From positions 186,001 to 250,000 of the IMG/VR virus record IMGVR_UViG_3300027708_000012: 64,000 nt of DNA. One strand, 5' to 3'. Below are positions 3,253 through 63,295 of the stretch, piece after piece (the first letter of the stretch is position 1; every line of letters begins with the position of its first letter). The notes beneath the pieces were generated by a model. The model did no database searches and was not told the DNA's origin. It saw only the letters and a program-made list of their open reading frames with translations. Made by a program: the position numbers and the translations under genes.

Positions 3253-3279
3253 AAAAAAGGGCCCTAGTGGCCCTTTTTT
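3253..3279. terminator. Bidirectional intrinsic terminator between convergent genes
   Basis: AAAAAAGGGCC-CTAGT-GGCCCTTTTTT. Confidence 0.85.

Positions 3280-15505: not shown

Positions 15506-15506
<1 letters not shown>
14994..15506 (-). CDS. Short fibre/adaptor protein with T4 gp10-like N-terminal motif
   Basis: VGASANDKAGDAIRTAFIKCNNNFDELY; NIWYDDQSGRLFVYY module. Confidence 0.7.
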
Positions 15507-27535
<12,029 letters not shown>

Positions 27536-27921: not shown

Positions 27922-28212
27922 ATGATGTTCATAGGCACTGAATTTCGTCAAACACAACACGTGAGAACTAGTAAACGTGGTAAACATCACACTTATAGTC
28001 GTAATAAGACTGTATTGGTACTTCAGTGTGATTGTTGCGGAGAAGTGTTTAACCGAGATAAAGGATCTATGGATCCTAATCGATTAACAAATAATGTTTA
28101 CCATGTATGCAGCAAATGCGATATTAAAAAATTTGCACAAAGTAAAGGCGTTGAAAGTAGGAATGTATGGAGTATTCCTGCCAGTAGCCTTAAGACCGTA
28201 GACCAACTCTAG
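27922..28212 (+). CDS. Small zinc-binding hypothetical protein
   Basis: CDCC and CSKC pairs; TAAATA upstream at 27915-27920. Confidence 0.7.
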   Translation: MMFIGTEFRQTQHVRTSKRGKHHTYSRNKTVLVLQCDCCGEVFNRDKGSMDPNRLTNNVYHVCSKCDIKKFAQSKGVESRNVWSIPASSLKTVDQL

Positions 28213-28750
28213 AGCTGACAATATTCCAGTTGATAATTTTCCATTGGTTATTTAGGTAGCTTTTTTTATCAGCCTGGTAATCTAATGCCCAGGCATGTTC
28301 CCACCAATCAATTAACAATACAATATCTAGTTTTATTTGATGATTTTTAATTGTTTTGATAGTACCATCACTTGCCAAATATATCCAACCGCTACCTTGT
28401 ATTTTCATTGCTTCTTTTTGGAAATCATCCTTGAATTTATCAAAACTTTTAAAATATTTGTTGATAAAATTTTCAGCAATATTTGTGGGTTGATTGGATG
28501 CCTGTGGTGCTTGGTATTGTGTGAACAAAATATGGTGTAAAAACGCACCCGCTTCATTGAAGTCTGCATCGCCTTCGCCGTTGTTAAAACGGTCAACATA
28601 GCCCTTGTACAGTTTTCCATAATGATATTTCATAGTATCTTCGGATATAGCAGGCTCCAATTCGTCCTTTTTGTAGGGAAGAATTGCTTGCTCTAGTGTC
28701 TTAGGAGCATGGCCTTCATTTAAACTAACATAACGAATAAAGTTGTACAT
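28190..28750 (-). CDS. sod: Fe/Mn superoxide dismutase
   Basis: YHYGK, FLHHILF, GSGWIYL, DWWEHAWALDY; four metal ligands plausible. Confidence 0.9.
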   Translation of the reverse strand: MYNFIRYVSLNEGHAPKTLEQAILPYKKDELEPAISEDTMKYHYGKLYKGYVDRFNNGEGDADFNEAGAFLHHILFTQYQAPQASNQPTNIAENFINKYFKSFDKFKDDFQKEAMKIQGSGWIYLASDGTIKTIKNHQIKLDIVLLIDWWEHAWALDYQADKKSYLNNQWKIINWNIVSSRVGLRS

Positions 28751-36789: not shown

Positions 36790-36839
36790 TAATTTTTTTA
36801 AGAAATATGCAACCCTATAAATATGTCACAAGGAAAATT

Positions 36840-37883
36840 ATGGACTTTACACCTGGAAAACCAATTAGAACTTATGCAGAAAATGGTGCATGGCGTGATT
36901 GGAGTACTGATGAATTGGTTGGGGACAAGCTAAACTTCTTACCAAATTGGAAATGTGGCGCAGGCGTTGACAGTCTATATGTTGATATGGATGGATACGT
37001 TTGGACAGCCAGTTGTCGTGTAGGCGGCAAATTAGGAAATGTATTTGAAGACTTTCGTGTGCCCGATGATTGGATTGATTGCAAACGTAATGTTTGTAGT
37101 TGCGGCGCCGACCTCTTTATTCCAAAAGTTAATAAAATTGAATTTAAACCATTACTTCGTAGAGGTGCTGGGTTAGAAACTGAAATTGAGCTACGTGATG
37201 ATACCCTAACTGATTTTGTTGCTATGGAAAGAACTCATGCAAGTAATCAAAAACAAGTTTATTGGGAAATAGGTCGTCGTTGCAATTATGATTGTAGTTA
37301 TTGCTGGCCGTGGATACACAATAATACCGATCCGCACAAATCGCTAGAAGAACTAATGAAAGCTACAGCACTGATAGAAGAGAAATTCACCAAAGGTGAA
37401 GCAGCTAACTTTATCATTAGCGGCGGCGAGCCAACGGTTAATAAAGATTTCTTAGACTGGTTGCGTTATCTAAACGCCATGGGACATCATGTTAGTTTGC
37501 ATAGTAACGGAAGTCGTTTACCGGACTACTACAGAGAAATCATACACTATGGTGATTTAAATTTAAGTGTACATTTTGAATTTTATGATCGTGCAAAGTT
37601 CGTTCGTGTAGTAGAAGCTATTGCAGACGAAAAAGCCAATAACGGTGGGTTAGGTCATCTGGAAATAAAATTCATGATGGCACCACATAATAGAGAAGAA
37701 ACATTAAGTTTAGAAGAAGAACTCAAAACTCTTCCGAATTTTATAGACTTTTGTACTTGGGCAGTAGTACCTATCCGTGGCGGCTTAGATAATAAAAATA
37801 GTAAGCCAAATTCAACTAGCGGAAGCGAAGTTATGGAGGGTTACACAAAGGAAGACTATATTTTGTTTGGAGACAGAAAGTGA
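36840..37883 (+). CDS. Radical SAM protein with N-terminal SPASM/twitch-like Cys domain
   Basis: CNYDCSYC, ISGGEPT, HSNGSR; N-terminal WKCGAG...C...C...CSC; start moved to MDFTP after TATAAATA (36816-36823) and the RBS. Confidence 0.85.
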   Translation: MDFTPGKPIRTYAENGAWRDWSTDELVGDKLNFLPNWKCGAGVDSLYVDMDGYVWTASCRVGGKLGNVFEDFRVPDDWIDCKRNVCSCGADLFIPKVNKIEFKPLLRRGAGLETEIELRDDTLTDFVAMERTHASNQKQVYWEIGRRCNYDCSYCWPWIHNNTDPHKSLEELMKATALIEEKFTKGEAANFIISGGEPTVNKDFLDWLRYLNAMGHHVSLHSNGSRLPDYYREIIHYGDLNLSVHFEFYDRAKFVRVVEAIADEKANNGGLGHLEIKFMMAPHNREETLSLEEELKTLPNFIDFCTWAVVPIRGGLDNKNSKPNSTSGSEVMEGYTKEDYILFGDRK

Positions 37884-39401: not shown

Positions 39402-40112
39402 TTATCTAATATAAGTGTCATCTTTTAATGATTGTATAAAACTTTTAAGCTCTACAGCGTTAGCTACTTTATCCCATAGCTGTTCAGTTTTTCTCTTTTT
39501 TAGTTGATCATTTATTTTCCCGCGATATATTGGACGTTGTATGTATTCAAATAGTTCTGCTACTATATTTTCATAGTGTATAGTAGTGTAAGTTATATCT
39601 AGCGATTTCAACCAATTATCAAAATTCTTATTTTGTTCGTATAACCAAGCCATTTCTTCAAAGTGATGTATTTCTAAATCATCGGGTAAGTCAGATGCTG
39701 TAAATTCGTGCCACACACCTGTGGATAATGCTAGTCCGTAACTTAGTATTTGAGCTTCTATATCTTGTCTTTTTAACACTACAAATTCTATATTACATTT
39801 TTCTATTCTTTTAATAATTTCTTTATGATTAGGGATATTACTGTAAGGAAAAAATCTTACCACAAGTGATTGATTTTTGTCACCATTCTCTAATGCTAAT
39901 AGCACATTTTCAACACGTTCTTCTATAGAAATTGAGCTAGTATCATCGTAATAGTTAAGAGTGTTATCATCGTTTATTTTTACTCTAGTTTCTAAATTAT
40001 GAGTAAATGGCTCGTATAGGTTTGCCATGTTACGAGTTGAACTTTCAAGCAGTGTGGCCAGTAATTGACTACCACTACGCGGTAACCCTAAAATGCAAAA
40101 TCTCTTTTTCAT
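39402..40112 (-). CDS. Sulfotransferase-like protein (Stf0/P-loop type)
   Basis: ILGLPRSGSQLL 5'-PSB loop, LYEPF, LKRQDIEAQILS, IHYE. Confidence 0.7.
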   Translation of the reverse strand: MKKRFCILGLPRSGSQLLATLLESSTRNMANLYEPFTHNLETRVKINDDNTLNYYDDTSSISIEERVENVLLALENGDKNQSLVVRFFPYSNIPNHKEIIKRIEKCNIEFVVLKRQDIEAQILSYGLALSTGVWHEFTASDLPDDLEIHHFEEMAWLYEQNKNFDNWLKSLDITYTTIHYENIVAELFEYIQRPIYRGKINDQLKKRKTEQLWDKVANAVELKSFIQSLKDDTYIR

Positions 40113-41059
40113 TACTTTTCCTTAGTACTCATAATATCAAAATTACAATGACACATATTTTTGCTACACACTATTGGCTCAGTTGGGAGAGTTAAATCTA
40201 CGTCGTTTATTTTACCAACAGCACCACCCTCTTTACACCATCCTCGATAAATTGAACCATCCATATCAACAATCAATTGCTCAATACCAGCATAGCATTT
40301 CCAGCCAGACCAGTCATTGATTTTTTCGCTAATGAACCTATGCGCACTTGATACTTGGCTAGTACCGTCAGGATATACTACACGCATAGCACCTCTGTAA
40401 TAATCAAATGTCTTGGTAAATTTAATATGTTTACTGATTAATTCGTGTTGCTTATCAAATATTCTCTTTTGAAAATCATTATAATCATAGAGTGTATCAC
40501 CAAAGTCGTGGATCAATGGCTGCAAGGCCATACTAATATTGCCTAAATTTTTAATTTTATTTGCTACAGCATAACAATGATCAAACTTTTCAGGACTCAT
40601 CATTATGTTAACGTGAGTGCGTACATCGTTGTTTAATAATTTAACTACGTCAATAAAGTGTTTATCGTCAGCATGCTCTGGATGAAAGCTAAGACATACA
40701 TGATCAAAGTATTGTTTATTTTCTTCCCAGTATCTTAGTGTGCGTGATCCATTACTGATTAAACCAACTTTGACACCCATCTCAGAACAAAATTGACAAA
40801 TTTCAATAAAATGTTTATACATTGTGACTTCACCACCAGTGAATTCAAAATATATTTTTTTATGAAAATATTGATCTTTTACACGAGCAATGAAATTTTT
40901 AATTACGCTAGGATCAGGCCAATACTTTGATCCATCGTGCAGTGCTGAAGGACAATACGAGCAACTATAGTTACAGGTATTGCCCAAGCACCAATTGACT
41001 ACAAACCAATCTTCGTGCGAATTGTTTGAATGTTCTAACCGTATATATTTGTGTTCCAT
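40112..41059 (-). CDS. Radical SAM protein with C-terminal SPASM/twitch-like domain
   Basis: CNYSCSYC, FTGGEVT, ISNGSR; C-terminal WKCYAG...C...C...CHC. Confidence 0.88.
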   Translation of the reverse strand: MEHKYIRLEHSNNSHEDWFVVNWCLGNTCNYSCSYCPSALHDGSKYWPDPSVIKNFIARVKDQYFHKKIYFEFTGGEVTMYKHFIEICQFCSEMGVKVGLISNGSRTLRYWEENKQYFDHVCLSFHPEHADDKHFIDVVKLLNNDVRTHVNIMMSPEKFDHCYAVANKIKNLGNISMALQPLIHDFGDTLYDYNDFQKRIFDKQHELISKHIKFTKTFDYYRGAMRVVYPDGTSQVSSAHRFISEKINDWSGWKCYAGIEQLIVDMDGSIYRGWCKEGGAVGKINDVDLTLPTEPIVCSKNMCHCNFDIMSTKEK

Positions 41060-45616: not shown

Positions 45617-46207
45617 TTATGGACGTTTTGTTATGATTTCGTCAATCAACCCGTATTCCAAGGCTTCCTGCGCACTCATGTATTTGTCTCGTTCCATGTC
45701 GTATTTGAATTGCTCGTAGGTTTTGCCCTTGCTGTTATGGTTAACATAGATCTGTGTCAAATTCTTCTTCATTTTAAGAATCTCTTCGACTTGGATTTCC
45801 ATGTCTGTAGCCTGCCCACCTGCACCGCCCGAGGGCTGATGAATCATGTGTCGAGCGTTTGGTAGCATTTTACGCTTGCCAGGAGCACCAGCAGTAGCAA
45901 GCAGACTTCCCATACTACAGGCTTGGCCCATGACGACTGTGCAAACATCAGGCTTAATGAATTGCATAGTATCGTAAATAGCCATGCCAGCTGTAACCAC
46001 TCCGCCCGGACTATTGATAAAAAAGGTAATGTCTTCATTTCCTTGACTTTCTAAAAAAAGTAATTGTGCCACTAACAAACTGGAACTATGTTCGTTAACA
46101 TCGGTGTCTAGCATGACAATTCGATCTTTTAGTAAGCGACTGTAAATGTCGTAACTACGTTCTCCGCGAGCTTCTTGCTCAATAACCATTGGTACTAAAT
46201 TTGGCAT
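45617..46207 (-). CDS. clpP: ATP-dependent Clp protease proteolytic subunit
   Basis: [24 protein letters not shown] (Ser), MIHQP (His), MERD (Asp). Confidence 0.96.
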
Positions 46208-53445: not shown

Positions 53446-53663
53446 ATAATTTTTCCTAGCCCTAGCCAAATTAATTGATCTAGTTCTTGTTGATAGTCTT
53501 GTCCAATTCTACGTTTTTCGTAGATGGCTTGCAACACTTCCTTACCATCGCCATAGTCCATAACACCAGAACCGCGAGACTCTAATTCTTCAATAAGATC
53601 ATCTGTTTCAAATTCTGACAAGTCGACATCTACTTCAACTTCTGTGTAAATTGTTTTATACAT
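53442..53663 (-). CDS. Small acidic hypothetical protein
   Basis: EVDVDLSEFETDDLIEELESRG. Confidence 0.7.
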   Translation of the reverse strand: MYKTIYTEVEVDVDLSEFETDDLIEELESRGSGVMDYGDGKEVLQAIYEKRRIGQDYQQELDQLIWLGLGKII

Positions 53664-54358
53664 TATTGTACTGCCTTAACGTAATTTAATCTAGTCACAT
53701 CATTTTGATGCTTCCAGTGTTTGCTGTGATCTTTAACTTTGGCTTTGACAATTACACACGGGCCAAGAGTCAGTGCTGTTTTGTTTAACCACGAAACCAT
53801 CCTGTTGTTTATTATAGCAGAAATATTGTAGCCTTCAAAGTTTTTTGACTTAACTGATTCAAGTATTTCACAATCTAAATCTTTTAGCTGGCTACCAATT
53901 TCTCCAAGATAACCTTCTTCAACTTGTCGTGCAACTTTTTTGATTTTGTTCTGAACTTTGTCCCTAGCATAGACACTTGGCAAGCAGGCAATGTATCCGA
54001 AGTTTTTAAGTTCAATTGCATCGTCACTTAAAAAACTATTGATATTAGTTTGAAATTCGTTTTCACCTTCGATGGCTGCAAACAATAGTCGTTTAAAATA
54101 TGTTTTAATTTCTTCTGCTAATACAGCATCTTCGGGTAGTACACGAAGTGGCATAGGAGCGTCTTTTGGATCAGCTGTCCAGTTATTAGGATTTACTGTA
54201 CACAACATCATCATTTTATTAGTTTGTTTTGAGTACAAATACTTGCCATCAGAAGCATATACTCCTTCGGCTTCTTTAAGATATGCACCGTTAACTCGCT
54301 GTGCGGCACAAGACAGTTCTAAAACTTGTTGCGTAGGAAACGTTTTCATATCGCTCAC
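53663..54358 (-). CDS. Hypothetical protein with possible C-terminal OB fold
   Basis: YLGEIGSQL...IVKAKVKDH...TRLNYVK. Confidence 0.65.
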   Translation of the reverse strand: MSDMKTFPTQQVLELSCAAQRVNGAYLKEAEGVYASDGKYLYSKQTNKMMMLCTVNPNNWTADPKDAPMPLRVLPEDAVLAEEIKTYFKRLLFAAIEGENEFQTNINSFLSDDAIELKNFGYIACLPSVYARDKVQNKIKKVARQVEEGYLGEIGSQLKDLDCEILESVKSKNFEGYNISAIINNRMVSWLNKTALTLGPCVIVKAKVKDHSKHWKHQNDVTRLNYVKAVQ

Positions 54359-54382
54359 TTTGTTAGTTTCTATACGTGTATT

Positions 54383-55045
54383 TTACATGAAAACGTATCT
54401 CTTGTCAACTGTTTCTAAATGATGATATATCTTTTTGGATAACCTTTTGGTAAGAGTGTTTAAACCAAAATGTCCAATGTAAGCCCTGAGCTGTGGGCTT
54501 GAAAATTGGCTACCTGTGCGCATCTTGCTCAAAACACTAATCCTGCCCATGCGCTTTTTGGCACGAGTTGCATCCATTGTTCGTAACAGTTCAATTGCTA
54601 TGCTGAACGCATACGCATCTAATTCGTCATCGTCTGCCAAGTAACGCTCATATGGAGTATCAAAATGCTCGCCATATTGATTATGGTCGCGTCGCATACT
54701 TTGATATTGATGTCTAAACTCATGCACAGTGGCATCAAAGATTTCTGTAAGAAAACTAGTTATTTGATGTGGCCCGAATGGTTCGTCGCCTTTTAAATTA
54801 TGATAGACGATGACTTCTATAGCGGTATCCATATTGAAATCATTTTCGCTGTCATAGTAAGCCATGACATACCACTTGTCAGGATCTAGTGTTTTATCTT
54901 TTTTAGTCTTAATAGCAATATCAAAATCGTGTAATTTGAAAGTATTGCGGGTACGACCTATTAATTTTTTGAAAGTTGTTTGCTCAGAACTTTGCTCTCG
55001 AACTTGTTTACAAACTTTATATACACGTTCAAGAATTATGTTCAT
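54383..55045 (-). CDS. HExxH (zincin-like) hypothetical protein, paralog B
   Basis: TVHEFRHQYQ ... DDDELDAYAF. Confidence 0.7.
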   Translation of the reverse strand: MNIILERVYKVCKQVREQSSEQTTFKKLIGRTRNTFKLHDFDIAIKTKKDKTLDPDKWYVMAYYDSENDFNMDTAIEVIVYHNLKGDEPFGPHQITSFLTEIFDATVHEFRHQYQSMRRDHNQYGEHFDTPYERYLADDDELDAYAFSIAIELLRTMDATRAKKRMGRISVLSKMRTGSQFSSPQLRAYIGHFGLNTLTKRLSKKIYHHLETVDKRYVFM

Positions 55046-55047
55046 GA

Positions 55048-55266
55048 TTACAACCTATAAGTTACTCTACCTTTTGAGAGATCGTATGTACTAACTTCTA
55101 ATCTTACATTATCGCCTAGAATAATTCTAATTTTATTTTGTTTAAGTTTTCCGCCTAAATAGCAAAGAAGCAAATTAGGCATATTATCAACTTTTACTCT
55201 AAACATATTTCCGGGCAACACTTCTTCAACTTGACCGGTTAATTCAATTACATCATCTTTGCTCAT
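55048..55266 (-). CDS. infA: Translation initiation factor IF-1
   Basis: MSKDDVIELTGQVEEVLP...FRV...IRIILGD.V..EVS.YDLSKGRVTYR. Confidence 0.95.
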   Translation of the reverse strand: MSKDDVIELTGQVEEVLPGNMFRVKVDNMPNLLLCYLGGKLKQNKIRIILGDNVRLEVSTYDLSKGRVTYRL

Positions 55267-55433
55267 ACTTTACTAATCACAATAGAACCATCCTCAATTT
55301 CAATGTTCAACGTGTCTCCGTCTTTCCAGCCGGTATTCTCTAAAAGCTCGGGCGGAAGTTTCATAATAACATTATCCGGATCTCCAGGAATGTCTTCAAA
55401 TATATCTTCTGCGTTAAATGTTAGTTTGTCCAT
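55263..55433 (-). CDS. AbrB/MazE-like small protein, 56 aa (not in ORF track)
   Basis: VIMKLPPELLENTGWKDGDTLNIEIEDGSIVISK; ATGA overlap with infA. Confidence 0.7.
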   Translation of the reverse strand: MDKLTFNAEDIFEDIPGDPDNVIMKLPPELLENTGWKDGDTLNIEIEDGSIVISKV

Positions 55434-55448
55434 TGTATATTTACTCTG

Positions 55449-56003
55449 TTATTCATCGTCACTCCAAGGAACTGGTCTCCAACCCAATCGATTTAAATCC
55501 AATTCAATTTCTTCAGTAACATGCCCTTCTGGTACATAGGTTCTGCCATCTGGATCTGTTTCAGGCATAACTGCGGTTAGTCCGTATCCTTTATCCCGGG
55601 TACCAATGCCGCTACAGTACCAATCAATATAGTCACCCTTTTCTTGCATATCGGCAATTATACCTCCGGCATGGCGCCAACTGCAACTCCAAACTTCGCC
55701 TTTCATTTCTTGCCAAAACTCTCTGCTTTGCCAAGTCATGTTGCACATTGCGGCATACAAGTTTTGAGCATAGATGTCCGACTGTTTAACTTTATCGCAA
55801 AGTTCTTTTGAACTGCGTAAGTCGTATTCCATATTGTTCTTTTGCCAAGCAGGATCTACGATTGCTTTGTCATCTTGTTCTTGCCAACTTTCGTACATGG
55901 CAATTAATTTAGAATCGGGCTCTTTGCCTTCATCTTGACACCGTTCAATATACCCGTCTCGTTGAAAAGTATGACGATCAGGGCTCTTATTTACTTTTAC
56001 CAT
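55449..56003 (-). CDS. Hypothetical phage protein
   Basis: Likely start MVKVNKS at 56003; YAQNLYAAMCN, SWRHAGGIIAD. Confidence 0.75.
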   Translation of the reverse strand: MVKVNKSPDRHTFQRDGYIERCQDEGKEPDSKLIAMYESWQEQDDKAIVDPAWQKNNMEYDLRSSKELCDKVKQSDIYAQNLYAAMCNMTWQSREFWQEMKGEVWSCSWRHAGGIIADMQEKGDYIDWYCSGIGTRDKGYGLTAVMPETDPDGRTYVPEGHVTEEIELDLNRLGWRPVPWSDDE

Positions 56004-56322
56004 TATGGAAATTACCTTGGATGCAATGGCGGACTTCGTGTCCAATTGTATGAAAATTTGCTGTAGGTCCTGTGATGATTGTACACTGAGTGCCTTCGTT
56101 ATTCCAAAAGCTGCAAGCATCGACACCAAATCCAAAGCCTTGTCCAGTTAATCGTTTGCTTTCTGCATCGCAAGCAGCCTGAACATTATTTACAGGTCTG
56201 AATGTAATAGTCGTTCGATTAGTCATGTTACGAGTCATAAGAAACTCTTCGTGCGGATCTTCTTGATAAGCAAACGAGTTAGCGGTTACTAACAAACTTA
56301 CAATTACTAATGCCTTTTTCAT
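55987..56322 (-). CDS. Exported small HExxH protein
   Basis: Signal peptide MKKALVIVSLLVTANSFA; GHEVRHC. Confidence 0.7.
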   Translation of the reverse strand: MKKALVIVSLLVTANSFAYQEDPHEEFLMTRNMTNRTTITFRPVNNVQAACDAESKRLTGQGFGFGVDACSFWNNEGTQCTIITGPTANFHTIGHEVRHCIQGNFHNGKSK

Positions 56323-56346
56323 ATGTGCCTCTGTGTGTTAATAAAA

Positions 56347-56457
56347 TGGTGTAGACGGTAGGATTCGAACCTACAAAGTCACCCTAAGGGCTAGACCCTT
56401 GCCCTCCGTTCGCCGAAGCTACTAGGAGGAGGTATACCAAGTTCCACTCACGTCCAC
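56347..56457 (-). ncRNA. Atypical tRNA-like RNA, 111 nt, CCA-encoded
   Basis: Acceptor GTGGACG/CGTCTAC-A-CCA; T arm GTAGG-TTCGAAT-CCTAC; D-loop GG; no canonical 7-nt anticodon loop. Confidence 0.8.
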
Positions 56458-56463
56458 ATTTAT

Positions 56464-56492
56464 ATTATACAATCGATCTGCATTTAAGTCAA
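56464..56492 (-). promoter_or_regulatory. Sigma70-type promoter of the tRNA-like RNA
   Basis: TTGACT, 17 nt, TATAAT; G1 of the RNA is the 7th nt after the -10 box. Confidence 0.8.
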
Positions 56493-56508
56493 CGCAGATT
56501 GGTTAAAA

Positions 56509-56871
56509 CTAGTCTGCTGATCTAGTTAGATAGTAATCACGTATTTTGGTACATCCAAAAGAAGATTTGATACTTTCTTTAACAATGTTGGTATCGAATT
56601 TCTTACAAGAAAATACATCTAAATAAATTTGTCCTAGATCATCAACAAAATGAGCAACAATACTAGAAGTAACAATAATTTGTACAACGGTGAAGCCAGC
56701 TTTATCTGGAAATTCGGATGCGGTGTATTCAATTACAGGGTTGCCAACTGGCGACATATCTATATCTTTTACTAACTTTTTAATCCATCTTTCAACATTA
56801 TCTCGATTTGACATCAACAACTGATTACCGCCTCCACAATCGAGTATTGATTGATAACCCCAGTAATCCAT
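56509..56871 (-). CDS. speD: Pyruvoyl-dependent S-adenosylmethionine decarboxylase-like proenzyme
   Basis: AGFTVVQIIVTSSIVAHF, YLDVFSCK. Confidence 0.75.
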   Translation of the reverse strand: MDYWGYQSILDCGGGNQLLMSNRDNVERWIKKLVKDIDMSPVGNPVIEYTASEFPDKAGFTVVQIIVTSSIVAHFVDDLGQIYLDVFSCKKFDTNIVKESIKSSFGCTKIRDYYLTRSAD

Positions 56872-56895
56872 TTAATTTCCTTATTATATAGTAAC

Positions 56896-56924
56896 ATTGT
56901 ACAATTAATTTAAATTTAAGTCAA
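56896..56924 (-). promoter_or_regulatory. Sigma70-type promoter
   Basis: TTGACT, 17 nt, TACAAT. Confidence 0.75.
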
Positions 56925-56926
56925 CA

Positions 56927-56950
56927 AAAAAGGCTCCGGAGAGCCTTTTT
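56927..56950 (-). terminator. Intrinsic terminator after dctP
   Basis: AAAAAGGCTC-CGGA-GAGCCTTTTT. Confidence 0.85.
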
Positions 56951-56962
56951 AAATTTAATCAA

Positions 56963-57907
56963 TTATTTTGATTGAATCTTAGCTACTAAGCCAGCAGTAA
57001 AATAGTTCTCAAATTTCTCGTAAACTACTTTAGTTGCTTCTGCAAAGCGAACTTGCTCTTCTGTGCTCATACGAACAACTTCAATACCGTCAGCTTCTGC
57101 ACGAGCTTGTACAAGTGCGATGTCGTCGATACTTAGGCTACGCTCATAACGTGCGGCTTCTTTAGCGGCTTCGCTAACAACTGCCTGTAGTTCTGAACTT
57201 AGTGTGTTCCAGAAGTCAGTACCAATCAAAATGCTTGTTAAGAACAAGCTGTGTTCTGTGTGGTTGATAACTTTAGATACTTTGTCGTGTCCTAGTGCAT
57301 AAACACGAGGATATGTGCTTTCGCCAACTGTTACATTAGCTGAAGCCAAGTTCTCTGATAGTTCTTCCAATTCCATTGGAACTACATCAGCACCAAGGGT
57401 TTTGAATGTTTCGATAGCAACTGGGCTGAAACTTGTGCGCAACTTCATACCACGTAGGTCTTCAATCTTAGCTACTGCTTCATTACCAGGAATGATACGG
57501 AAACCGCCTGAGTATGTGAAAGCTAAACCTTTAACTTTCTTAGACTCTTGCAAGCTATCTAACAAACTAGCGCCGACTTCACCTTCGAATACGCGACTTG
57601 CGTGATCGTGGTCTTTAAACAAGAACGGTAGATCCAAAGCATAAAAGTCTTTGTTGATCTTACCTAGTGTAATTGTGTAAGTTTGACTCATTTCGATTGC
57701 GCCAGAATCTAGCAAATCTACTAAGCTGTGCTTGTCAACTACAACACCGTTATTGTACTTTTCAGCGTATTCGCTCATAGTCATAACTTCGATTTCAAGT
57801 TGTTCAGGTGCTCGTGCATTTACTTCTTGAGCAAATACTTTGGCGGCGCGAATAAACAACTCAATTGGCTCGTGTGCGAGTACCCATTTTATGTGTTTTT
57901 TGTTCAT
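56963..57907 (-). CDS. dctP: TRAP-type solute-binding protein (DctP family) without signal peptide
   Basis: ALDLPFLF, KIEDLRGMKLRT, FKTLGADVVPM, HTEHSL; N-terminus MNKKHIKWVLAHEP has no hydrophobic core. Confidence 0.85.
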   Translation of the reverse strand: MNKKHIKWVLAHEPIELFIRAAKVFAQEVNARAPEQLEIEVMTMSEYAEKYNNGVVVDKHSLVDLLDSGAIEMSQTYTITLGKINKDFYALDLPFLFKDHDHASRVFEGEVGASLLDSLQESKKVKGLAFTYSGGFRIIPGNEAVAKIEDLRGMKLRTSFSPVAIETFKTLGADVVPMELEELSENLASANVTVGESTYPRVYALGHDKVSKVINHTEHSLFLTSILIGTDFWNTLSSELQAVVSEAAKEAARYERSLSIDDIALVQARAEADGIEVVRMSTEEQVRFAEATKVVYEKFENYFTAGLVAKIQSK

Positions 57908-58202: not shown

Positions 58203-59450
58203 TTAATGTGGCCAGTCTATTTTATAGTTAACTATGTGATGTTTAAAGTATTCGTATACACCTGGATCGTCAACGCTTATCTTTTTATAGTCATTGATCA
58301 TACCTAAATTTGTAAGACCTTCTGGGGTTTTCTTACCGTTAATTGTTAAATTCCCTAAAGATTCAAGTTTAGTTTTGAAATAAAAATACCAATTGTTCTT
58401 ATCATAGTTACATATGTAATTCCTAGCTGTGTACTTATATGTTGCAATGGTATTGTGTATTTTTTCTCCGTTGTTATTATTGACCATACTCCATAACTGA
58501 TAATCGATTCCGTTAAACCAATTAATAGTAGAATCTATGCATTGTCGTACAGACACCACTGTATTAAAATATAATGCACCCCTCACCGAACAATTTAAAT
58601 ATTTTACATTAAAAATCAACCACCAAAAGAAATCGTGCAAGCTATGCACAGGAACCGATGATGTGTTTATATTATGCACATATTTTTGATATAATAATCT
58701 ACCGTGCTCCAGACCTTCGGGCGTTGTATTGTATGCAAAATGCCTAATAAGAAGATCTTTATAAGCACTGTAATGCACATCACCGGACGATATTTTATAT
58801 TTTAAAGGCCGTAAGTTTGCTTGTACTTCAGGACTAAGATGTCTAGTATATTCGTCATAGTTATTGTACATCTCTAATCCGATACTAGTTCCCATAATAC
58901 AATCGCCTTCGTCTGAAGTAATTGGCATGTAGCCCATGTTGATTATATCGTCGTACCAATAGTTCAATGAATCGAGTATTTTAAATTTACCGTGGATATA
59001 ATTTTCCCATATGTACGGGTTTTCAATTACGGCGTGCATACTCGAAGAAATAATCACCGATTTTAATTCTTCTTGATTTAAATTTTTAAGAAGAGAAACA
59101 AGAACAAGTGTGCTATCTATGCCGCCTGAATATAATAATGCAAATTTTTTCCCTTGTTGAATTAAGGCTTTAATTTCCAAAGCGCGACTATCTGTTACTT
59201 CCTCAAACGATTTATTAAAATTTGGATCGTAAGCAGGCATTGCAAAATCTGGAATGATTTCTTGCTTCCACGGAAGGCTCCACTCCCCTTCGTTGCGTGT
59301 AACAAATCGACTTAATGAAAATCTTTTTGCAATATCTAAATAAAATTTACCGCCGGGCCCAGATTCTTCTCTGATGCTGTTCCAAAAATCCCAAGGTGCA
59401 TATCTGTCACCTCGAATATTATGGAAATAAAGTGTGTCGTCTAAGTTCAT
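58203..59450 (-). CDS. PP-loop (asparagine-synthetase-like) ATP pyrophosphatase 1
   Basis: ALLYSGGIDSTLVL; ITSDEGDCIMG; no N-terminal Cys glutaminase domain. Confidence 0.7.
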   Translation of the reverse strand: MNLDDTLYFHNIRGDRYAPWDFWNSIREESGPGGKFYLDIAKRFSLSRFVTRNEGEWSLPWKQEIIPDFAMPAYDPNFNKSFEEVTDSRALEIKALIQQGKKFALLYSGGIDSTLVLVSLLKNLNQEELKSVIISSSMHAVIENPYIWENYIHGKFKILDSLNYWYDDIINMGYMPITSDEGDCIMGTSIGLEMYNNYDEYTRHLSPEVQANLRPLKYKISSGDVHYSAYKDLLIRHFAYNTTPEGLEHGRLLYQKYVHNINTSSVPVHSLHDFFWWLIFNVKYLNCSVRGALYFNTVVSVRQCIDSTINWFNGIDYQLWSMVNNNNGEKIHNTIATYKYTARNYICNYDKNNWYFYFKTKLESLGNLTINGKKTPEGLTNLGMINDYKKISVDDPGVYEYFKHHIVNYKIDWPH

Positions 59451-60202
59451 CGTTTTTTAATTAAAGGTATTAATATTTTTGCGGAGCTGTCAAACTCCCA
59501 CCATTTTTCTCCAAAGTCTGCATTTCCAGCATTGTGATGATGATTGTTATGCCAACCTTGCCCCCATACAAATAGACCAGTAAACCAATTATTAACTGAA
59601 TTGTCATCTGTGTTATGATTTCGGTATCCCGCTGATGGAATATGGCCTACTACATTGACTAAATTATCTTGATGATGACTTAACAAAATTGCTGGAATTA
59701 AAACCCCTAGAGTAAATTGCCAAGAAACAATTGCAGAAATTAAAATGGTACTCCAAAATATTTTATTATGATTTTCATGTAGGTAAACAAGATAGGGGTC
59801 TTTCATAATATCTCTTGCTGACATTAAATTTACCTTTGCCGGATTAATTTTACGTTGCCATGTTATAAATGCACTTAGTTTTCCGTGTATGGGACTGTGC
59901 ATATCTTGCTCTTTGTCTGCATACCTATGATGTATTCCTCGATGTAAAGCTACCCAGAACGGTAAACTTCCATCGGCACTCATCATACCTAAGTAAGCTA
60001 ACACTTTAGCAATAATAGGATATGTCTCAAAACTTTTATGAGCAAAGTATCTATGGTATCCAACAGCAACACCAAACCCGCCAATTAATGTCCACATGAA
60101 TAAAATGCCAATCAGATTCCACCAAGTATAGTTTATAAAAAACAACGAGGCTAGAAAAATAACGTGTAAGGGATAACTTACTTTATATAAATGTTTATTC
60201 AT
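59447..60202 (-). CDS. Membrane fatty-acid desaturase (delta-9-like)
   Basis: His boxes HRYFAH, HRGIHH, HNNHH; DNSVN, GQGWHNNHH. Confidence 0.92.
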   Translation of the reverse strand: MNKHLYKVSYPLHVIFLASLFFINYTWWNLIGILFMWTLIGGFGVAVGYHRYFAHKSFETYPIIAKVLAYLGMMSADGSLPFWVALHRGIHHRYADKEQDMHSPIHGKLSAFITWQRKINPAKVNLMSARDIMKDPYLVYLHENHNKIFWSTILISAIVSWQFTLGVLIPAILLSHHQDNLVNVVGHIPSAGYRNHNTDDNSVNNWFTGLFVWGQGWHNNHHHNAGNADFGEKWWEFDSSAKILIPLIKKR

Positions 60203-62431: not shown

Positions 62432-63295
62432 ATGTTTAAAAATATACCTAAAGTATTTGCACATGTATCGTCTGTAAAAGATAGCAATTTTGTATTACCT
62501 GAATATATTTTAAACTATAGTAATGATACGGCAAATTTGTTTCACAAATATTGTCCGCACAGGATGTATCCGTTAGGTTTGACAGGGGAGCATGTTAACA
62601 ACATAACTTGCAAATTTCATAATTTTAAATGGAATAAAGACGGAACGCCTATTAATAATCCAAAAAAATTGCATTGTGGCAGTGCAGAAATAGGTCGCTC
62701 CGGATTAGTATTTAAAAATTTTAAAGAACCAAATCATCAATGGGTGGATGATTTAGCCGACGAAAAAAACTTAGTATACAGTCATTCTTGTCGCGGCGAA
62801 AGCAAAGGTAGTTGGTTATGGTTAATGGATGCCGAAGCAGATTACCTGCATATATATGGTGGGCAAGTACACCCTCGACTATCTTCTATCATTGATCTAG
62901 AAGAATCAATAATGGATCAAGGAGAAGGATGGATTTATCAAGAGCACACTCCGGGCTGGTGGTCAGTATATATCTATCCGTATACTTTTATAGAACATAC
63001 AGATGGGTGTTTATCTGTAAACTATGTGGTACCGTCTAATTCAATTGATGAGTATGGGTTTGAGTGGATCACACAATTTTATTACGACCCGACAGTATCG
63101 ACTGATCTTAGAGAAGAATTTGAAACTCTAGAAACTGTATTCAGAGAAGATGTAGCTGTTGCTGAATTGCAGAAAGGAAATTATTTTCCTTTAATGAAAG
63201 CTATGAATCGCTACGAAGATCACTGTGTTCATTTTGGTCAGTGGTTTCGGAACCACCGATTGCCGCCATCAATCGAGATTCAGAAAGTAGAATAG
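62432..63295 (+). CDS. Rieske 2Fe-2S oxygenase-like protein
   Basis: CPHR ... CKFH Rieske motif; EADYLHIYGGQVH; FREDVAVAE. Confidence 0.85.
   Translation: MFKNIPKVFAHVSSVKDSNFVLPEYILNYSNDTANLFHKYCPHRMYPLGLTGEHVNNITCKFHNFKWNKDGTPINNPKKLHCGSAEIGRSGLVFKNFKEPNHQWVDDLADEKNLVYSHSCRGESKGSWLWLMDAEADYLHIYGGQVHPRLSSIIDLEESIMDQGEGWIYQEHTPGWWSVYIYPYTFIEHTDGCLSVNYVVPSNSIDEYGFEWITQFYYDPTVSTDLREEFETLETVFREDVAVAELQKGNYFPLMKAMNRYEDHCVHFGQWFRNHRLPPSIEIQKVE

What the first reader, a model, noticed from the sequence alone, without database searches (positions are those of the whole stretch)
56347..56492. Stand-alone 111-nt tRNA-like RNA with a remodelled anticodon arm and an extra arm
Seen: intact acceptor stem, discriminator A, encoded CCA, canonical T arm and GG D-loop. 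In place of a 7-nt anticodon loop, the CCTCC/GGAGG stem encloses 17 nt (TAGTAGCTTCGGCGAAC) containing a GC-UUCG-GC mini-hairpin. Next is an AAGGG-TCTAG-CCCTT hairpin plus 11 further nt before the T arm; this segment can refold as CCC-TTA-GGG. It has its own TTGACT-17-TATAAT promoter, with predicted +1 at G1, so it may need no RNase P processing. Inference: a tRNA mimic rather than a decoding tRNA. It could be a decoy for host anticodon nucleases or tRNA-sensing defences, a synthetase or ribosome modulator (infA lies about 1.1 kb downstream), or an aminoacyl donor. The second hairpin loop contains CUA, which would read UAG only in a non-canonical fold.
Basis: partly seen in the sequence, partly recalled or inferred. 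Interest (0 to 1): 0.85.

Follow-up and report, generated by a model that had tools for sequence, protein, structure and literature searches.

The report
Phage tRNA look-alike lacking an anticodon
This is a real, strongly conserved small RNA of uncultured phages that is shaped like a leucine-type transfer RNA but has no anticodon, so it cannot decode and probably works as a tRNA body-double against some host or phage protein.

Summary
The feature is real and lies on the minus strand (RNA 56457..56347, promoter 56492..56464). It is one of more than 200 copies (116 distinct sequences) of an RNA family found only in viral contigs. It has no Rfam match and I found no description in the literature. 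Covariation supports every arm except the invariant D stem (19 of 30 pairs compensated; 97% paired against 35-49% in slid controls). The arm at the anticodon position is a closed hairpin of variable length (14-37 nt) capped by tetraloops, never a 7-nt loop. G3:U70 is not conserved, so it is not tmRNA-like. A consensus sigma-70 promoter places +1 at G1 in 115 of 117 distinct upstream regions. The RNA opens a conserved operon that includes IF1. Related phages carry real tRNAs (CAU, Leu-UAA, Arg-UCU) in the same slot. The D arm is Leu-like, and the whole E. coli leucine identity set (A73, G18G19, T loop, A15-U48) is kept, so LeuRS charging is predicted but untested. In 43% of distinct members, including this one, the central arm copies the stem of the 23S sarcin-ricin helix without its GAGA loop. 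The function is unproven. I favour a trans-acting, uncleavable decoy.

The parts
56487..56492 (-). -35 box, TTGACT
   Evidence: In the family the -35 box is TTGACA, TTGACT or TTGACC in 115 of 117 distinct upstream regions, and the spacer is 17 nt in 116 of 117.
56464..56469 (-). -10 box, TATAAT, ending 6 nt before G1 (predicted +1 = G1)
   Evidence: The distance is 6 nt in 115 of 117 distinct upstream regions. 51 of them match all 12 consensus positions.
56347..56457 (-). The 111-nt anticodon-less tRNA-like RNA (whole molecule)
   Evidence: 124.5 bits against the family model; covariation.
56451..56457 (-). Acceptor stem 5' strand (nt 1-7, GUGGACG). It pairs with nt 101-107.
   Evidence: Pairs 1-72, 2-71, 3-70 and 5-68 covary. 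Pair 3-70 is A-U in 72, G-C in 22 and G.U in 5 members.
56431..56448 (-). D arm (nt 10-27) with G18G19-type GG. It resembles the tRNA-Leu(UAA) D arm of related phages.
   Evidence: The stem is invariant, so covariation cannot test it.
56402..56430 (-). Central arm in place of the anticodon arm (nt 28-56): a 6-bp stem, an AGUA/GAA internal loop and a GC-UUCG-GC cap.
   Evidence: 4 of 6 base pairs compensated; family length range 14-37 nt.
56404..56428 (-). Segment resembling 23S rRNA helix 95 (the sarcin-ricin stem). CUCCUAGUA ... GAACGGAG matches E. coli 23S 2649-2657 and 2664-2671 at 16 of 17 positions. The GAGA loop is replaced by GC-UUCG-GC.
   Evidence: Present in 50 of 116 distinct members.
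56376..56398 (-). Long extra (variable) arm (nt 60-82): 5 bp including two G.U pairs, a 2-nt bulge, 4 bp and a UUA loop.
Evidence: 8 of 9 pairs compensated.
56358..56374 (-). T arm (nt 84-100), GUAGG-UUCGAAU-CCUAC
   Evidence: Three of 5 stem pairs covary and the loop is almost invariant.
56347..56357 (-). Acceptor 3' strand (nt 101-107), discriminator A and encoded CCA
   Evidence: ACCA is present in 99 of 99 aligned members, retrieved with a 5'-anchored pattern that did not fix it.
56323..56346 (-). Trailer: a UUUU run directly after the CCA, then the Shine-Dalgarno GAGG of the next gene. No terminator hairpin.
   Evidence: A run of 4-5 T follows the CCA in 68 of 124 distinct trailers.
55987..56322 (-). 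First gene of the operon: a 111-aa protein with an apparent N-terminal signal-like hydrophobic stretch (by eye, no predictor run) and an HExxH motif.
   Evidence: Syntenic in 147 of 170 loci. No Pfam family.
55449..56003 (-). Second gene: a conserved protein of about 184 aa with motifs YAQNLYAAMCN, WSCSWR and GDYIDWYCSG. Function unknown.
   Evidence: 585 or more viral contigs; 162 of 170 loci. The AlphaFold model has pLDDT 81 and no PDB fold match.
55263..55433 (-). AbrB/MazE-like small protein
   Evidence: Syntenic in 150 of 170 loci.
55048..55266 (-). Phage-encoded translation initiation factor IF1
   Evidence: PF01176, E = 2.4e-17. Syntenic in 160 of 170 loci.
53663..55045 (-). Two further conserved operon genes: 220 aa with HEFRH, and 231 aa.
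   Evidence: 157 and 131 of 170 loci.

Best explanation
**What it is (shown).** The RNA belongs to a large family of tRNA-shaped RNAs that so far occurs only in phages. It is transcribed without a leader from a near-consensus sigma-70 promoter, as the first element of a conserved, probably early, operon. It keeps a class II tRNA body:
- a 7-bp acceptor stem, A73 and an encoded CCA;
- a Leu-type D arm with GG;
- a canonical T arm;
- a long extra arm.

Its anticodon arm has been replaced by a closed helix with no anticodon.

**What follows (inferred).**
- It folds into the tRNA L-shape.
- It is released from the operon transcript by the usual bacterial 3' pathway: an RNase E cut in the U-rich trailer, then exonuclease trimming back to the CCA.
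- It is recognised by proteins that read the tRNA body rather than the anticodon.
- Because every element of the E. coli leucine identity set is kept and LeuRS ignores the anticodon arm, it is probably charged with leucine.
- It cannot decode.

**Favoured mechanism (inferred, not shown).** It acts in trans as an abundant, uncleavable substrate look-alike. It would soak up a protein that attacks or binds tRNA anticodon arms, variable arms or CCA ends. In about 43% of distinct members, including this one, it would also mimic the sarcin-ricin helix of 23S rRNA. The target would be a host defence nuclease or toxin of the tRNA- or SRL-cutting kind.
For: **Family and structure**
- 101 viral contigs share the exact 25-mer. 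In all there are 116 distinct sequences in 216 loci.
- 97.2% of cells are paired, and 19 of 30 pairs have compensatory changes. Slid controls give 35-49%.
- The RNA core is 86-93% identical between loci whose neighbouring gene is 80% identical at the nucleotide level.

**No anticodon**
- ARAGORN finds nothing in the window.
- The Rfam tRNA alignment fails only in the anticodon arm.
- The central arm is 14-37 nt with UUCG, CUUG, GNRA or other caps.

**Leaderless promoter**
- The -10 box ends 6 nt before G1 in 115 of 117 distinct upstream regions.

**tRNA slot**
- Relatives L148, L150 and L165 carry tRNA-CAU, tRNA-Leu(UAA) and tRNA-Arg(UCU) at the same place.

**Leu type**
- The D arm GUG-GAAUUGGUAGA-C(C) matches phage tRNA-Leu(UAA), not Ser or Tyr.
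- The family model's best hit outside the family is tRNA-Leu, both in L148 (32.1 bits) and in T4 (32.8 bits).
- A73, G18G19, A20a, U54, U55, C56 and A58, and an A/U pair at the 15-48 positions, are invariant.
- A review states that these are the E. coli Leu identity elements and that variants lacking the anticodon and variable arms are still leucylated (PMC9976931).

**Separate role from decoding**
- L189 carries both the mimic and real tRNA-Leu(UAA) and tRNA-Leu(CAA) genes.
- The RNA, with its own promoter, heads at least three different downstream gene sets.

**Decoy plausibility**
- Defence nucleases are known to cut the tRNA-Tyr variable arm (Septu, retron-Eco7) and anticodon stems (OLD, Schlafen). 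Overexpressed phage tRNA-Tyr partly protects host tRNA (PMC13096335).
- VapC toxins cut tRNA anticodon stem-loops or the SRL, 'that structurally mimics the ASL' (PMC7180214).
- The central arm of this copy equals E. coli 23S 2649-2657 and 2664-2671 at 16 of 17 positions, but lacks the cleavable GAGA loop.
Against: - No transcript, charging or binding data exist. Everything beyond the structure is inference.
- Known phage tRNAs that defeat tRNA nucleases do so by restoring decoding, and their anticodon matters (PMC12445682). A pure decoy against a catalytic enzyme has no precedent.
- The SRL-like module is absent from 57% of distinct members. Ten distinct members have only 5 bp plus CUUG. So it cannot be the core function, and 16 of 17 may partly reflect the constraints of a stem plus a common AGUA/GAA motif.
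- The RNA always sits 24-45 nt before an ORF with no terminator, which also fits a cis role.
- Thirty-three related loci have the protein module without any RNA, so the RNA is dispensable for that module.
- The invariance of the D arm (second search) and of the T arm and acceptor (first search) is partly forced by the patterns used to find members.
- The D-stem register is unresolved, with one extra A and one missing base relative to tRNA-Leu. This could impair LeuRS recognition.
Confidence: 0.4

Rival explanations
1. A cis-acting 5' module. The tRNA-like fold serves the operon transcript, in the way that tRNA-like elements mark processing sites in other systems. It would be a stable 5' structure and a defined RNase E or exonuclease processing site that sets the 5' end, stability or translation of the downstream mRNA. 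The released RNA would be a by-product.
For: - The RNA is always the first element after the promoter, and no terminator is found.
- The ORF starts 24-30 nt after the CCA in most loci.
- The RNA heads different operons in different phages.
- The same slot holds real tRNAs in relatives, with the ORF 18 nt after the last CCA.
Against: - A processing or stability element does not need a class II extra arm, invariant A73-CCA, GG and T-loop tertiary partners, or a Leu-type D arm. Yet all are kept by purifying selection and compensation.
- There is no 5' leader, so there is no RNase P step to exploit.
- Thirty-three related operons do without it.
Confidence: 0.2
2. A dedicated aminoacyl donor. The RNA is charged, probably with leucine, and is kept off the ribosome by lacking an anticodon. 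It would feed a non-ribosomal aminoacyl transfer, for example by an L/F-transferase-type N-degron enzyme, a Fem-like enzyme, or an unknown phage transferase.
For: - The full Leu identity set and an encoded CCA are present.
- It coexists with decoding tRNA-Leu genes.
- Several conserved neighbours have unknown function, two of them with HExxH motifs.
- The window also encodes ClpP.
Against: - No aminoacyl-transferase-like domain was found in any Pfam-scanned neighbour. About 50 of the window's ORFs were scanned; some went to PHROGs only and the 4009-aa ORF was not scanned.
- The conserved protein of about 184 aa has no known fold.
- Known donor tRNAs keep their anticodon loops.
Confidence: 0.12
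3. A translation modulator that works with the co-encoded IF1. The anticodon-less tRNA body would occupy a ribosomal tRNA site, or bind a translational GTPase, to bias initiation towards phage messages.
For: - IF1 lies in the same operon in 160 of 170 loci.
- The central arm carries rRNA-like sequence: the helix 95 stem, and ACCUCCU like the 16S 3' end.
- Some variants have a GUAACAA loop like 16S 1497-1503. The 16S comparison is from memory and was not checked.
Against: - The co-occurrence is confounded by shared descent of one phage clade.
- A second subfamily sits in an operon where tblastn found no IF1 within 3.5 kb downstream.
- The CCUCC is base-paired and covaries as a helix.
- The GAGA loop that contacts GTPases is missing.
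Confidence: 0.08
4. A miniature tmRNA-like rescue RNA charged with alanine, as suggested by G3:U70 in the window copy and by the only Rfam hit.
For: - The window copy has G3.U70 and A73.
- Rfam tmRNA scores 20.3 bits, E = 2.5e-6.
Against: - Pair 3-70 is A-U in 72, G-C in 22 and G.U in only 5 of 99 members.
- The score is far below the gathering threshold of 47, and only the acceptor and T arm align.
- There is no tag reading frame in 95-119 nt, and ARAGORN calls no tmRNA.
- The tmRNA-style long-range pairing GAGU/ACUU conflicts with the covarying extra arm.
Confidence: 0.03
5. A decoding tRNA in disguise (with an intron or unusual loop, for example an amber suppressor using CUA), or a decaying tRNA pseudogene.
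For: - ARAGORN calls a few members as long tRNAs.
- CUA is present in the window copy.
Against: - Those calls give inconsistent anticodons read from cap tetraloops: Arg-UCG from CUUCGG, Pro-GGG, Gly, Gln.
- The shortest members have nothing to splice (5 bp plus CUUG).
- CUA is not conserved and lies in a bulge.
- The window uses the standard code, with 93% coding density.
- Compensatory changes in 19 pairs, and conservation higher than in the neighbouring gene, exclude decay.
Confidence: 0.02

Closest known systems
Class II tRNA-Leu, especially the phage tRNA-Leu(UAA) genes found in the same slot in related phages (L148, L165, L189)
   Same: - 7-bp acceptor stem, A73 and CCA.
- D arm GUG-GAAU(U)GGUA(G/U)A-C.
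- GG and T-loop tertiary partners.
- A long extra arm.
- The same genomic position, between the promoter and the operon.
- tRNA-Leu is the best hit of the family model outside the family.

   Different: - No anticodon loop.
- One extra A after G9, and a shortened 3' strand in the D stem.
- A longer, bulged extra arm with two conserved G.U pairs.
- An unrelated acceptor sequence.
- Leaderless transcription.
Minimal tRNA-Leu substrates made in the laboratory (E. coli tRNA-Leu lacking anticodon and variable arms, still leucylated; summarised in PMC9976931)
   Same: It keeps exactly the elements reported to be sufficient: A73 and the D-loop/T-loop tertiary core.
   Different: This one is natural and conserved, and it keeps an extended central helix and an extra arm. 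Charging has not been tested.
Phage T4 RNAC and RNAD (species 1 and 2 stable RNAs)
   Same: They are phage-encoded stable RNAs next to tRNA genes, and their function is still unknown (PMC3014915, PMC9697503). The 3' 95 nt of rnaC has an acceptor-like stem and a UUCGAAU T arm, and it scores 21.1 bits with the family model.
   Different: There is no convincing homology. The T4 RNAs sit inside a tRNA cluster, are processed from precursors, lack an encoded CCA and are late RNAs. Their architecture is different.
tmRNA tRNA-like domain
   Same: Acceptor and T arm with no anticodon. It is the only Rfam hit.
   Different: No conserved G3:U70, no mRNA-like domain or pseudoknots, and it has a D stem and an extra arm.
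mascRNA/menRNA and bacterial Y RNA (YrlA) tRNA-like modules
   Same: Non-decoding tRNA mimics that cellular tRNA enzymes recognise.
   Different: mascRNA is cut from the 3' end of a long RNA by RNase P and RNase Z, and its CCA is added afterwards. In YrlA the ends form the Ro-binding stem and the acceptor-like stem is closed by a loop (from my own knowledge). Here the ends form an open acceptor stem with an encoded CCA, at the 5' end of an mRNA. There is no Rfam hit to either.
23S rRNA helix 95 (sarcin-ricin loop)
   Same: CUCCUAGUA...GA(A/C)CGGAG: the stem plus the bulged-G AGUA/GAA motif is identical at 16 of 17 positions to E. coli 2649-2657 and 2664-2671.
   Different: The GAGA tetraloop, which is the site of toxin cleavage and GTPase contact, is replaced by GC-UUCG-GC or other hairpins. 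The module is present in only 50 of 116 distinct members.
Phage tRNAs used as counter-defence (T5 tRNA-Tyr against retron-Eco7/Septu, tRNA-Lys against PARIS, tRNA-Thr against P2 OLD)
   Same: Phage-encoded tRNA-shaped RNAs with altered arms that escape nucleases.
   Different: Those replace the cut tRNA and need the right anticodon. This RNA has none, so it could only compete or inhibit.

Membership tests
Decoding tRNA (Rfam RF00005; ARAGORN) | 7-bp acceptor stem, discriminator base, CCA end and T arm with a UUCRANY loop | tested here: met
Decoding tRNA (Rfam RF00005; ARAGORN) | 5-bp anticodon stem closing a 7-nt loop with U33 and an anticodon | tested here: not met
   The loop is 17 nt in the window copy. 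In the family the arm is a closed hairpin of 14-37 nt. The anticodon arm is unaligned in the Rfam tRNA alignment.
Decoding tRNA (Rfam RF00005; ARAGORN) | Reaches detector thresholds | tested here: not met
   ARAGORN finds 0 genes in the window. Rfam finds nothing at gathering thresholds. The shortest member scores 28.4 against a threshold of 29.
tmRNA (RF00023) | G3:U70 alanine identity pair | tested here: not met
   Present in the window copy, but the family has A-U in 72, G-C in 22 and G.U in 5 members.
tmRNA (RF00023) | mRNA-like domain with resume codon, tag ORF and pseudoknots | tested here: not met
   The RNA is only 95-119 nt. ARAGORN calls no tmRNA. Rfam scores 20.3 against a threshold of 47, with 296 model positions deleted.
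Leucine-accepting class II tRNA (E. coli identity rules, PMC9976931) | Discriminator A73 | tested here: met
   A in 99 of 99 members, in an alignment whose members were not selected on this base.
Leucine-accepting class II tRNA (E. coli identity rules, PMC9976931) | G18G19, A20a and the T-loop partners U54, U55, C56 and A58 | tested here: met
   GGUA and UUCGAAU are invariant or nearly so. GGUA was partly fixed by the search pattern, but it is also invariant in the set, which did not fix it.
Leucine-accepting class II tRNA (E. coli identity rules, PMC9976931) | A15-U48 Levitt pair and a normal D-stem geometry | tested here: inconclusive
   Invariant A16 and U83 can supply the A15-U48 pair. However, the D arm has one extra A and a shortened 3' strand, and its register cannot be tested.
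Leucine-accepting class II tRNA (E. coli identity rules, PMC9976931) | Is actually leucylated by LeuRS | not testable with these tools
   Needs an in vitro charging assay or an acid gel.
Bacterial Y RNA (YrlA) tRNA-like domain | 5' and 3' ends form a Ro-binding stem, and the acceptor-like helix is closed | tested here: not met
   The ends form an open acceptor stem with ACCA. There is no Rfam match. The definition is from my own knowledge.
Sarcin-ricin loop (23S helix 95) | Bulged-G motif AGUA/GAA on the helix 95 stem | tested here: met
   16 of 17 positions are identical to E. coli 23S. This is a sequence match only. The fold of the motif is inferred.
Sarcin-ricin loop (23S helix 95) | GAGA tetraloop | tested here: not met
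   Replaced by GC-UUCG-GC. Other caps occur in other members.
T4 RNAC/RNAD | Sequence or structure homology to the T4 species 1 and 2 RNAs | tested here: inconclusive
   The family model hits the 3' part of rnaC at 21.1 bits, below several true T4 tRNAs.

The most novel reading that the evidence does not exclude
These phages encode a new class of RNA counter-measure. It would be a highly expressed, leaderless, leucine-type tRNA body whose anticodon arm is replaced by uncleavable helices, and in nearly half of the members by a copy of the sarcin-ricin helix stem. It would act as a competitive trap for host or rival-phage nucleases and toxins that recognise tRNA anticodon arms, variable arms or CCA ends, or the SRL. 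The swappable central-arm modules would be alleles in an arms race.
Probability: 0.25. Interest if true: 0.9.

Novelty: new variant of a known kind. Interest (0 to 1): 0.8.

Why it matters
Phage tRNAs have recently been recast as weapons against tRNA-cutting immune systems, but every known case works by replacing the tRNA that was cut. A conserved tRNA that has deliberately lost its anticodon, yet keeps everything a synthetase and other body-reading proteins need, would be a different principle: mimicry without decoding.

It is an abundant, well-defined and easily synthesised RNA of about 100 nt, with hundreds of natural variants. That makes several questions directly testable:
- What reads a tRNA body in an infected cell?
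- Is a non-decoding tRNA charged?
- Do RNA decoys exist for tRNA- or SRL-targeting toxins?

It may also bear on the fifty-year-old puzzle of phage T4's RNAC and RNAD. For genome annotation, it defines a family that current tRNA and Rfam tools miss or mislabel.

Tried and rejected
**Detector and database searches**
- ARAGORN and Rfam at gathering thresholds found nothing in the window.
- Megablast of 14 kb against cultured phages found no match.
- tblastn of two neighbouring proteins against cultured phages found none.
- blastn of the RNA against cultured phages matched only the T arm and acceptor of Aeromonas phage tRNA-Tyr. Against E. coli genomes it found nothing.

**Host tRNA or attachment-site copy**
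- The 25-mer is absent from 185,579 species genomes.
- A looser D-arm pattern gave 16 chance hits. The only model match among them lies in a coding region.
- Rejected.

**Recoding or a suppressor tRNA**
- The standard code fits, with 93% coding density.

**tmRNA-like P2 pairing and alanine identity**
- Rejected by covariation.

- Rejected.

**A partner protein found by co-occurrence**
- IF1, the 111-aa, 220-aa and 231-aa proteins and a radical SAM enzyme all track the RNA. This is one clade, so the association is uninformative.
- The divergent radical SAM genes in the two genomic contexts are not specifically related to each other.

**Fold of the conserved protein of about 184 aa**
- The model is confident, but there is no PDB match by sequence or by fold.
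- The 220-aa and 231-aa proteins have no PDB sequence match.

**Pfam scan for tRNA enzymes**
- No tRNA-related enzyme was found among the roughly 50 window ORFs scanned against Pfam. Ten larger ORFs went to PHROGs only, and the 4009-aa ORF and most ORFs under 150 aa were not scanned.

**Literature**
- Eight searches found no description of this family.
- A 2023 catalogue of viral structured RNAs lists tRNA-like candidates that ARAGORN sometimes calls tRNA-Arg or tRNA-Tyr. These could overlap with this family, but the catalogue's supplementary tables are not held here.

**Not used**
- The metagenome scan and the 1.84-billion-protein search.
Full report
**1. What is there**

The finding's coordinates are right, but the feature reads on the minus strand. 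The RNA runs from 56457 to 56347 and is 111 nt long:
- GUGGACG (acceptor 5' strand)
- UGA
- a D arm with GG
- a central arm, UCCUCC-UAGUAGCUUCGGCGAAC-GGAGGG
- CAA
- an extra arm
- U
- GUAGG-UUCGAAU-CCUAC (T arm)
- CGUCUAC (acceptor 3' strand)
- A-CCA

A TTGACT-17-TATAAT promoter lies at 56492..56464 (11 of 12 matches). Its -10 box ends 6 nt before G1. The 186-nt region is intergenic on both strands.

Standard detectors see nothing. ARAGORN finds no tRNA or tmRNA anywhere in the 64 kb. Rfam finds nothing at gathering scores. A permissive Rfam scan gives only tmRNA at 20.3 bits (threshold 47), aligning the acceptor and T arm and deleting 296 model positions. The single-sequence folding energy is ordinary (z = -0.43), so one sequence alone proves nothing.

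**2. It is a family**

An exact 25-mer (T-loop to CCA) occurs in 101 IMG/VR contigs. Every one carries the same kind of RNA behind a -10 box.

Together they give 116 distinct sequences in 216 loci, 95-119 nt long. One locus, on the 345-kb contig IMGVR_UViG_3300027708_000012, is identical to the window, which identifies its source.

The 25-mer is absent from one genome of each of 185,579 prokaryotic species. A looser pattern gave only chance hits there. No cultured phage has a full-length match. So far the family is known only from uncultured phages.

The window itself is a phage with the standard genetic code and 37.5% G+C. It encodes DNA ligase, tail-fibre-like proteins, a clamp-loader-like ATPase, PhoH and a 4009-aa protein.

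**3. Structure**

*Covariation.* On a plain MAFFT alignment of 66 distinct members, my cloverleaf-like structure is 98.9% paired, against 41-55% when partners are slid. RNAalifold independently recovers the same helices apart from the D stem.

On 99 distinct members aligned to a covariance model, 97.2% of cells pair (slid controls 35-49%). Nineteen of 30 pairs show compensatory changes:

| Helix | Pairs with compensatory change |
|---|---|
| Acceptor stem | 4 of 7 |
| Central stem | 4 of 6 |
| Extra arm | 8 of 9 |
| T stem | 3 of 5 |
| D stem | none: G11-C26 and U12-A25 never vary, so it is untested |

The second alignment is fitted to the model, and the sequences are related. The slid controls and the MAFFT result are therefore the fairer measures.

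The supported fold is a long extra arm: GGGUC/GACUU (with two conserved G.U pairs), a 2-nt bulge, then GCCC-UUA-GGGU. The 'CUA' lies in that bulge and is not conserved.

*The central arm.* The arm at the anticodon position is never an anticodon arm. It ranges from 5 bp plus a CUUG tetraloop to helices of about 15 bp with internal loops. The caps are UUCG, UUUG, GCAA, GUAA, ACCCC or UGUAACAAAC. ARAGORN's occasional calls on family members read 'anticodons' out of these caps and disagree with one another: Arg-UCG, Pro-GGG, Gly and Gln. The shortest member reaches 28.4 bits on Rfam tRNA (threshold 29) with only the anticodon arm failing to align.

*Alanine identity.* Pair 3-70 is A-U in 72, G-C in 22 and G.U in 5 members. 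The G3:U70 of the window copy is therefore incidental, and the tmRNA/alanine idea fails.

*Invariant positions.* A73 and CCA are invariant in the set that was not selected for them. Two identical-sequence loci (probably one contig fetched twice) encode ACCG.

*Conservation.* The RNA core is more conserved (93% and 86% for the 5' and 3' parts) than the neighbouring protein gene (80% at the nucleotide level).

**4. Transcription and context**

In 117 distinct upstream regions the best sigma-70 promoter has a 17-nt spacer in 116. Its -10 box ends exactly 6 nt before G1 in 115. Fifty-one match all 12 consensus positions. G1 is thus the predicted start, with no leader for RNase P to remove.

After the CCA comes a U-run and then, 24-30 nt on in most loci, the start of an ORF. 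No terminator is found. In E. coli, tRNA 3' ends are normally made by an RNase E cut in such a trailer followed by exonuclease trimming to the CCA. That pathway comes from established knowledge and was not tested here.

Downstream synteny is strong. The order of genes after the RNA is:
1. a 111-aa HExxH protein with an apparent N-terminal signal-like stretch, judged by eye (147 of 170 loci);
2. a protein of about 184 aa of unknown function (162 of 170);
3. an AbrB/MazE-like protein (150 of 170);
4. IF1 (160 of 170);
5. a 220-aa HExxH protein (157 of 170);
6. a 231-aa protein (131 of 170).

The protein of about 184 aa occurs in at least 585 viral contigs. Of the best 80:
- 43 have the RNA in the same slot (L162 has only a truncated relative);
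- three (L148, L150, L165) have genuine tRNA genes there, tRNA-CAU, tRNA-Leu(UAA) and tRNA-Arg(UCU);
- 33 have nothing there.

So the RNA occupies a tRNA slot at the head of an operon.

The co-occurrence with IF1 and the other genes reflects one clade and cannot identify a partner.

Eight loci show the RNA, again with its own promoter at the same spacing, heading other gene sets. Six of them lead into a gene starting MSNTVEQLK; in L188, the one scanned, this is an Hc1 histone-like gene followed by a methyltransferase and ThyX. The divergent radical SAM genes upstream in the two contexts are not specifically related. L189 has the mimic and also real tRNA-Leu(UAA) and tRNA-Leu(CAA) genes. The mimic therefore does not simply replace a decoder.

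**5. Which tRNA does it imitate?**

The 5' half aligns with the tRNA-Leu(UAA) genes of related phages:
- Family: UG-A-GUG-GAAUUGGUAGA-CC
- tRNA-Leu(UAA): UG-GUG-(G/A)AAU(A)GGUA(G/U)A-CAC

T4 tRNA-Ser and Aeromonas phage tRNA-Tyr have unrelated D arms.

The family model's best hits outside the family are tRNA-Leu in L148 (32.1 bits) and in T4 (32.8 bits, against Ser 28.9 and Thr 28.5). The margin is small, and in L165 tRNA-Arg was the only hit below E = 0.01, so the D-arm alignment is the main evidence.

The 3' 48 nt resemble an Aeromonas T4-like phage tRNA-Tyr (86% identity). The molecule is class II with A73, which allows Leu or Tyr and argues against Ser.

A review of identity rules (PMC9976931) states the following:
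- In E. coli tRNA-Leu, A73 is crucial, but the anticodon and the long variable arm are not.
- A15-U48, G18G19, A20a and the D-loop/T-loop tertiary pairs are essential.
- Variants lacking the anticodon and variable arms remain active.
- Tyrosylation needs U35.
- G73 marks serine.

Every listed Leu element is present and invariant here. The caveat is that the D-stem register is altered and unresolved. I therefore infer, but cannot show, that the RNA is a LeuRS substrate.

**6. The central arm of this copy looks like the sarcin-ricin helix**

Nucleotides 30-38 and 47-54 read CUCCUAGUA...GAACGGAG. E. coli 23S rRNA 2649-2657 and 2664-2671 read CUCCUAGUA...GACCGGAG, taken from the MG1655 rrlH gene. 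That is 16 of 17 identical positions, including the AGUA/GAA bulged-G motif. The naming of that motif is from established knowledge.

The GAGA tetraloop, where SRL-directed toxins cut and GTPases dock, is replaced by GC-UUCG-GC.

This module, always with the same flanks, occurs in 50 of 116 distinct members (100 of 216 loci). Identical backbones can carry either this module or the minimal CUUG hairpin. The window's module sits on 18 different backbones. The central arm therefore behaves as a set of swappable, individually conserved alleles.

Given a stem plus a common motif, chance identity of the five free stem positions is roughly 1 in 1000, and I noticed the match after the fact. I treat it as a lead, not a result.

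A review notes that VapC toxins cut either tRNA anticodon stem-loops or the SRL, 'that structurally mimics the ASL' (PMC7180214).

**7. How it most likely works**

*Shown:* a conserved, non-decoding, tRNA-shaped RNA with its own strong promoter.

*Inferred:* the L-shape, release from the operon transcript, and leucylation.

*Beyond that, I favour a trans-acting body-double* (about 0.4 for the whole chain, and about 0.25 for the specific anti-defence decoy reading). The reasons are:
- The anticodon loop has been replaced by tight caps in every member rather than left to drift.
- The parts read by body-recognising proteins are the parts kept.
- The promoter is built for high expression.
- tRNA-directed immunity is now known to be common and to hit variable arms and anticodon stems. 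Overexpressed phage tRNA-Tyr partly shields host tRNA (PMC13096335, PMC13056530, PMC12445682).

Against this reading:
- Documented rescue tRNAs work by decoding.
- No decoy of this kind is known.
- The SRL-like module is optional.

The main rival is a cis role as a 5' processing or stability module (0.2). This fits the invariable position before an ORF, but not the retention of class II and identity features. The other rivals are an aminoacyl donor (0.12), an IF1-linked translation modulator (0.08), a tmRNA-like RNA (0.03), and a disguised decoder or pseudogene (0.02).

**8. Comparison with known systems, and novelty**

The RNA works like other non-decoding tRNA mimics: the tmRNA tRNA-like domain, mascRNA, the Y-RNA tRNA-like module and laboratory minimal tRNA-Leu. 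It is a member of none of them (see the membership table).

The nearest phage precedent is T4 RNAC/RNAD, whose roles are 'unknown' (PMC3014915, PMC9697503). The 3' part of rnaC scores 21 bits with the family model, below true tRNAs.

I found no description of this family in Rfam 15 or in eight literature searches. A 2023 catalogue of viral structured RNAs may contain it unrecognised, but I could not check this.

I rate it a new variant of a known kind (a tRNA mimic), with high interest because it is abundant, sharply defined and directly testable.

**9. Limits**

- Members were found by exact patterns, so invariance of the D arm (second search) or of the T arm and acceptor (first search) is partly imposed. 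Each region is, however, unconstrained in the other search.
- The sequences are related, so shuffle controls overstate significance.
- No expression, charging or binding data exist.
- The hosts are unknown.

Noticed in passing
window 56404-56428 (-); E. coli rrlH in L284:2708-2730: The central arm of the RNA matches the stem and bulged-G motif of 23S rRNA helix 95 (the sarcin-ricin loop) at 16 of 17 positions, but lacks the GAGA loop. The module is present in 50 of 116 distinct family members.
   Followed up: partly
L148:2492-2743, L150, L165:2550-2991: In related phages the same promoter-proximal slot holds real tRNA genes for A/U-ending codons: CAU (Met or Ile2), Leu-UAA and Arg-UCU. The next ORF starts 18 nt after the last CCA.
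   Followed up: partly
L188:10724-10832 (-), also L189, L194, L215, L253, L264; L246: A second subfamily of the RNA has a different central arm (GUGA-capped) and an internal-loop extra arm. It heads a different operon: Hc1 histone-like protein, methyltransferase, ThyX. L246 shows a third context.
   Followed up: partly
L162:1871-1999: A truncated relative keeps only the extra-arm end, the T arm and the acceptor 3' strand (CGTCTGC-ACCA). It sits behind its own TATAAT box and has a 5-nt complementary 5' end. It may be a minimal or decaying form.
   Followed up: no
family alignment A4, columns 14 and 24 (window nt 14 and 24): Two D-arm positions co-vary (G..U, U..A, G..G) but cannot stack on the invariant D stem. 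Relative to tRNA-Leu, the D arm has an extra A after G9 and lacks the middle base of the 3' strand.
   Followed up: partly
window 56475-56500 (-): A 6-bp inverted repeat, ATCTGC/GCAGAT, brackets the -35 box of the RNA promoter. It was not visible in the ~35-nt upstream stretches printed for other loci (not searched for systematically). It could be an operator or the end of the upstream gene's transcript.
   Followed up: no
window 55048-55266 (-): A phage-encoded translation initiation factor IF1 lies in the same operon as the RNA in 160 of 170 loci.
   Followed up: partly
window 15506-27535 (-): A single 4009-aa ORF lies next to tail and baseplate-like genes (a T4 gp9/10-like N-terminal domain at 14994-15506).
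   Followed up: no
window 28190-28750, 36807-37880, 39402-41059, 45617-46207, 56509-57907, 59447-60202, 62432-63295: The window is rich in auxiliary metabolic genes: Fe/Mn superoxide dismutase, at least two radical SAM enzymes, a sulfotransferase, ClpP, an AdoMet decarboxylase-like protein, a DctP solute-binding protein, a fatty-acid desaturase and a Rieske protein. An APS-kinase-like protein lies at 3278-4072 and PhoH at 2505-3224.
   Followed up: no
window 55449-56003 (-); alignment A5: The conserved protein of about 184 aa (at least 585 viral contigs) gives a confident AlphaFold model (pLDDT 81). It has no PDB match by sequence or by fold and may be a new fold.
   Followed up: partly
L283:1407-1501 (-) (phage T4 rnaC): The 3' 95 nt of T4 species 1 RNA form an acceptor-like stem and a UUCGAAU T arm. 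They score 21.1 bits with the family model. The function of this T4 RNA is still unknown.
   Followed up: partly
L168:4367-4839: ARAGORN calls a permuted tmRNA with a 27-residue tag, downstream of the conserved protein module in one related locus. The call is unverified.
   Followed up: no
L161/L212 (same RNA): This member encodes ACCG instead of ACCA at its 3' end. It would need trimming and CCA repair to gain a normal end.
   Followed up: no
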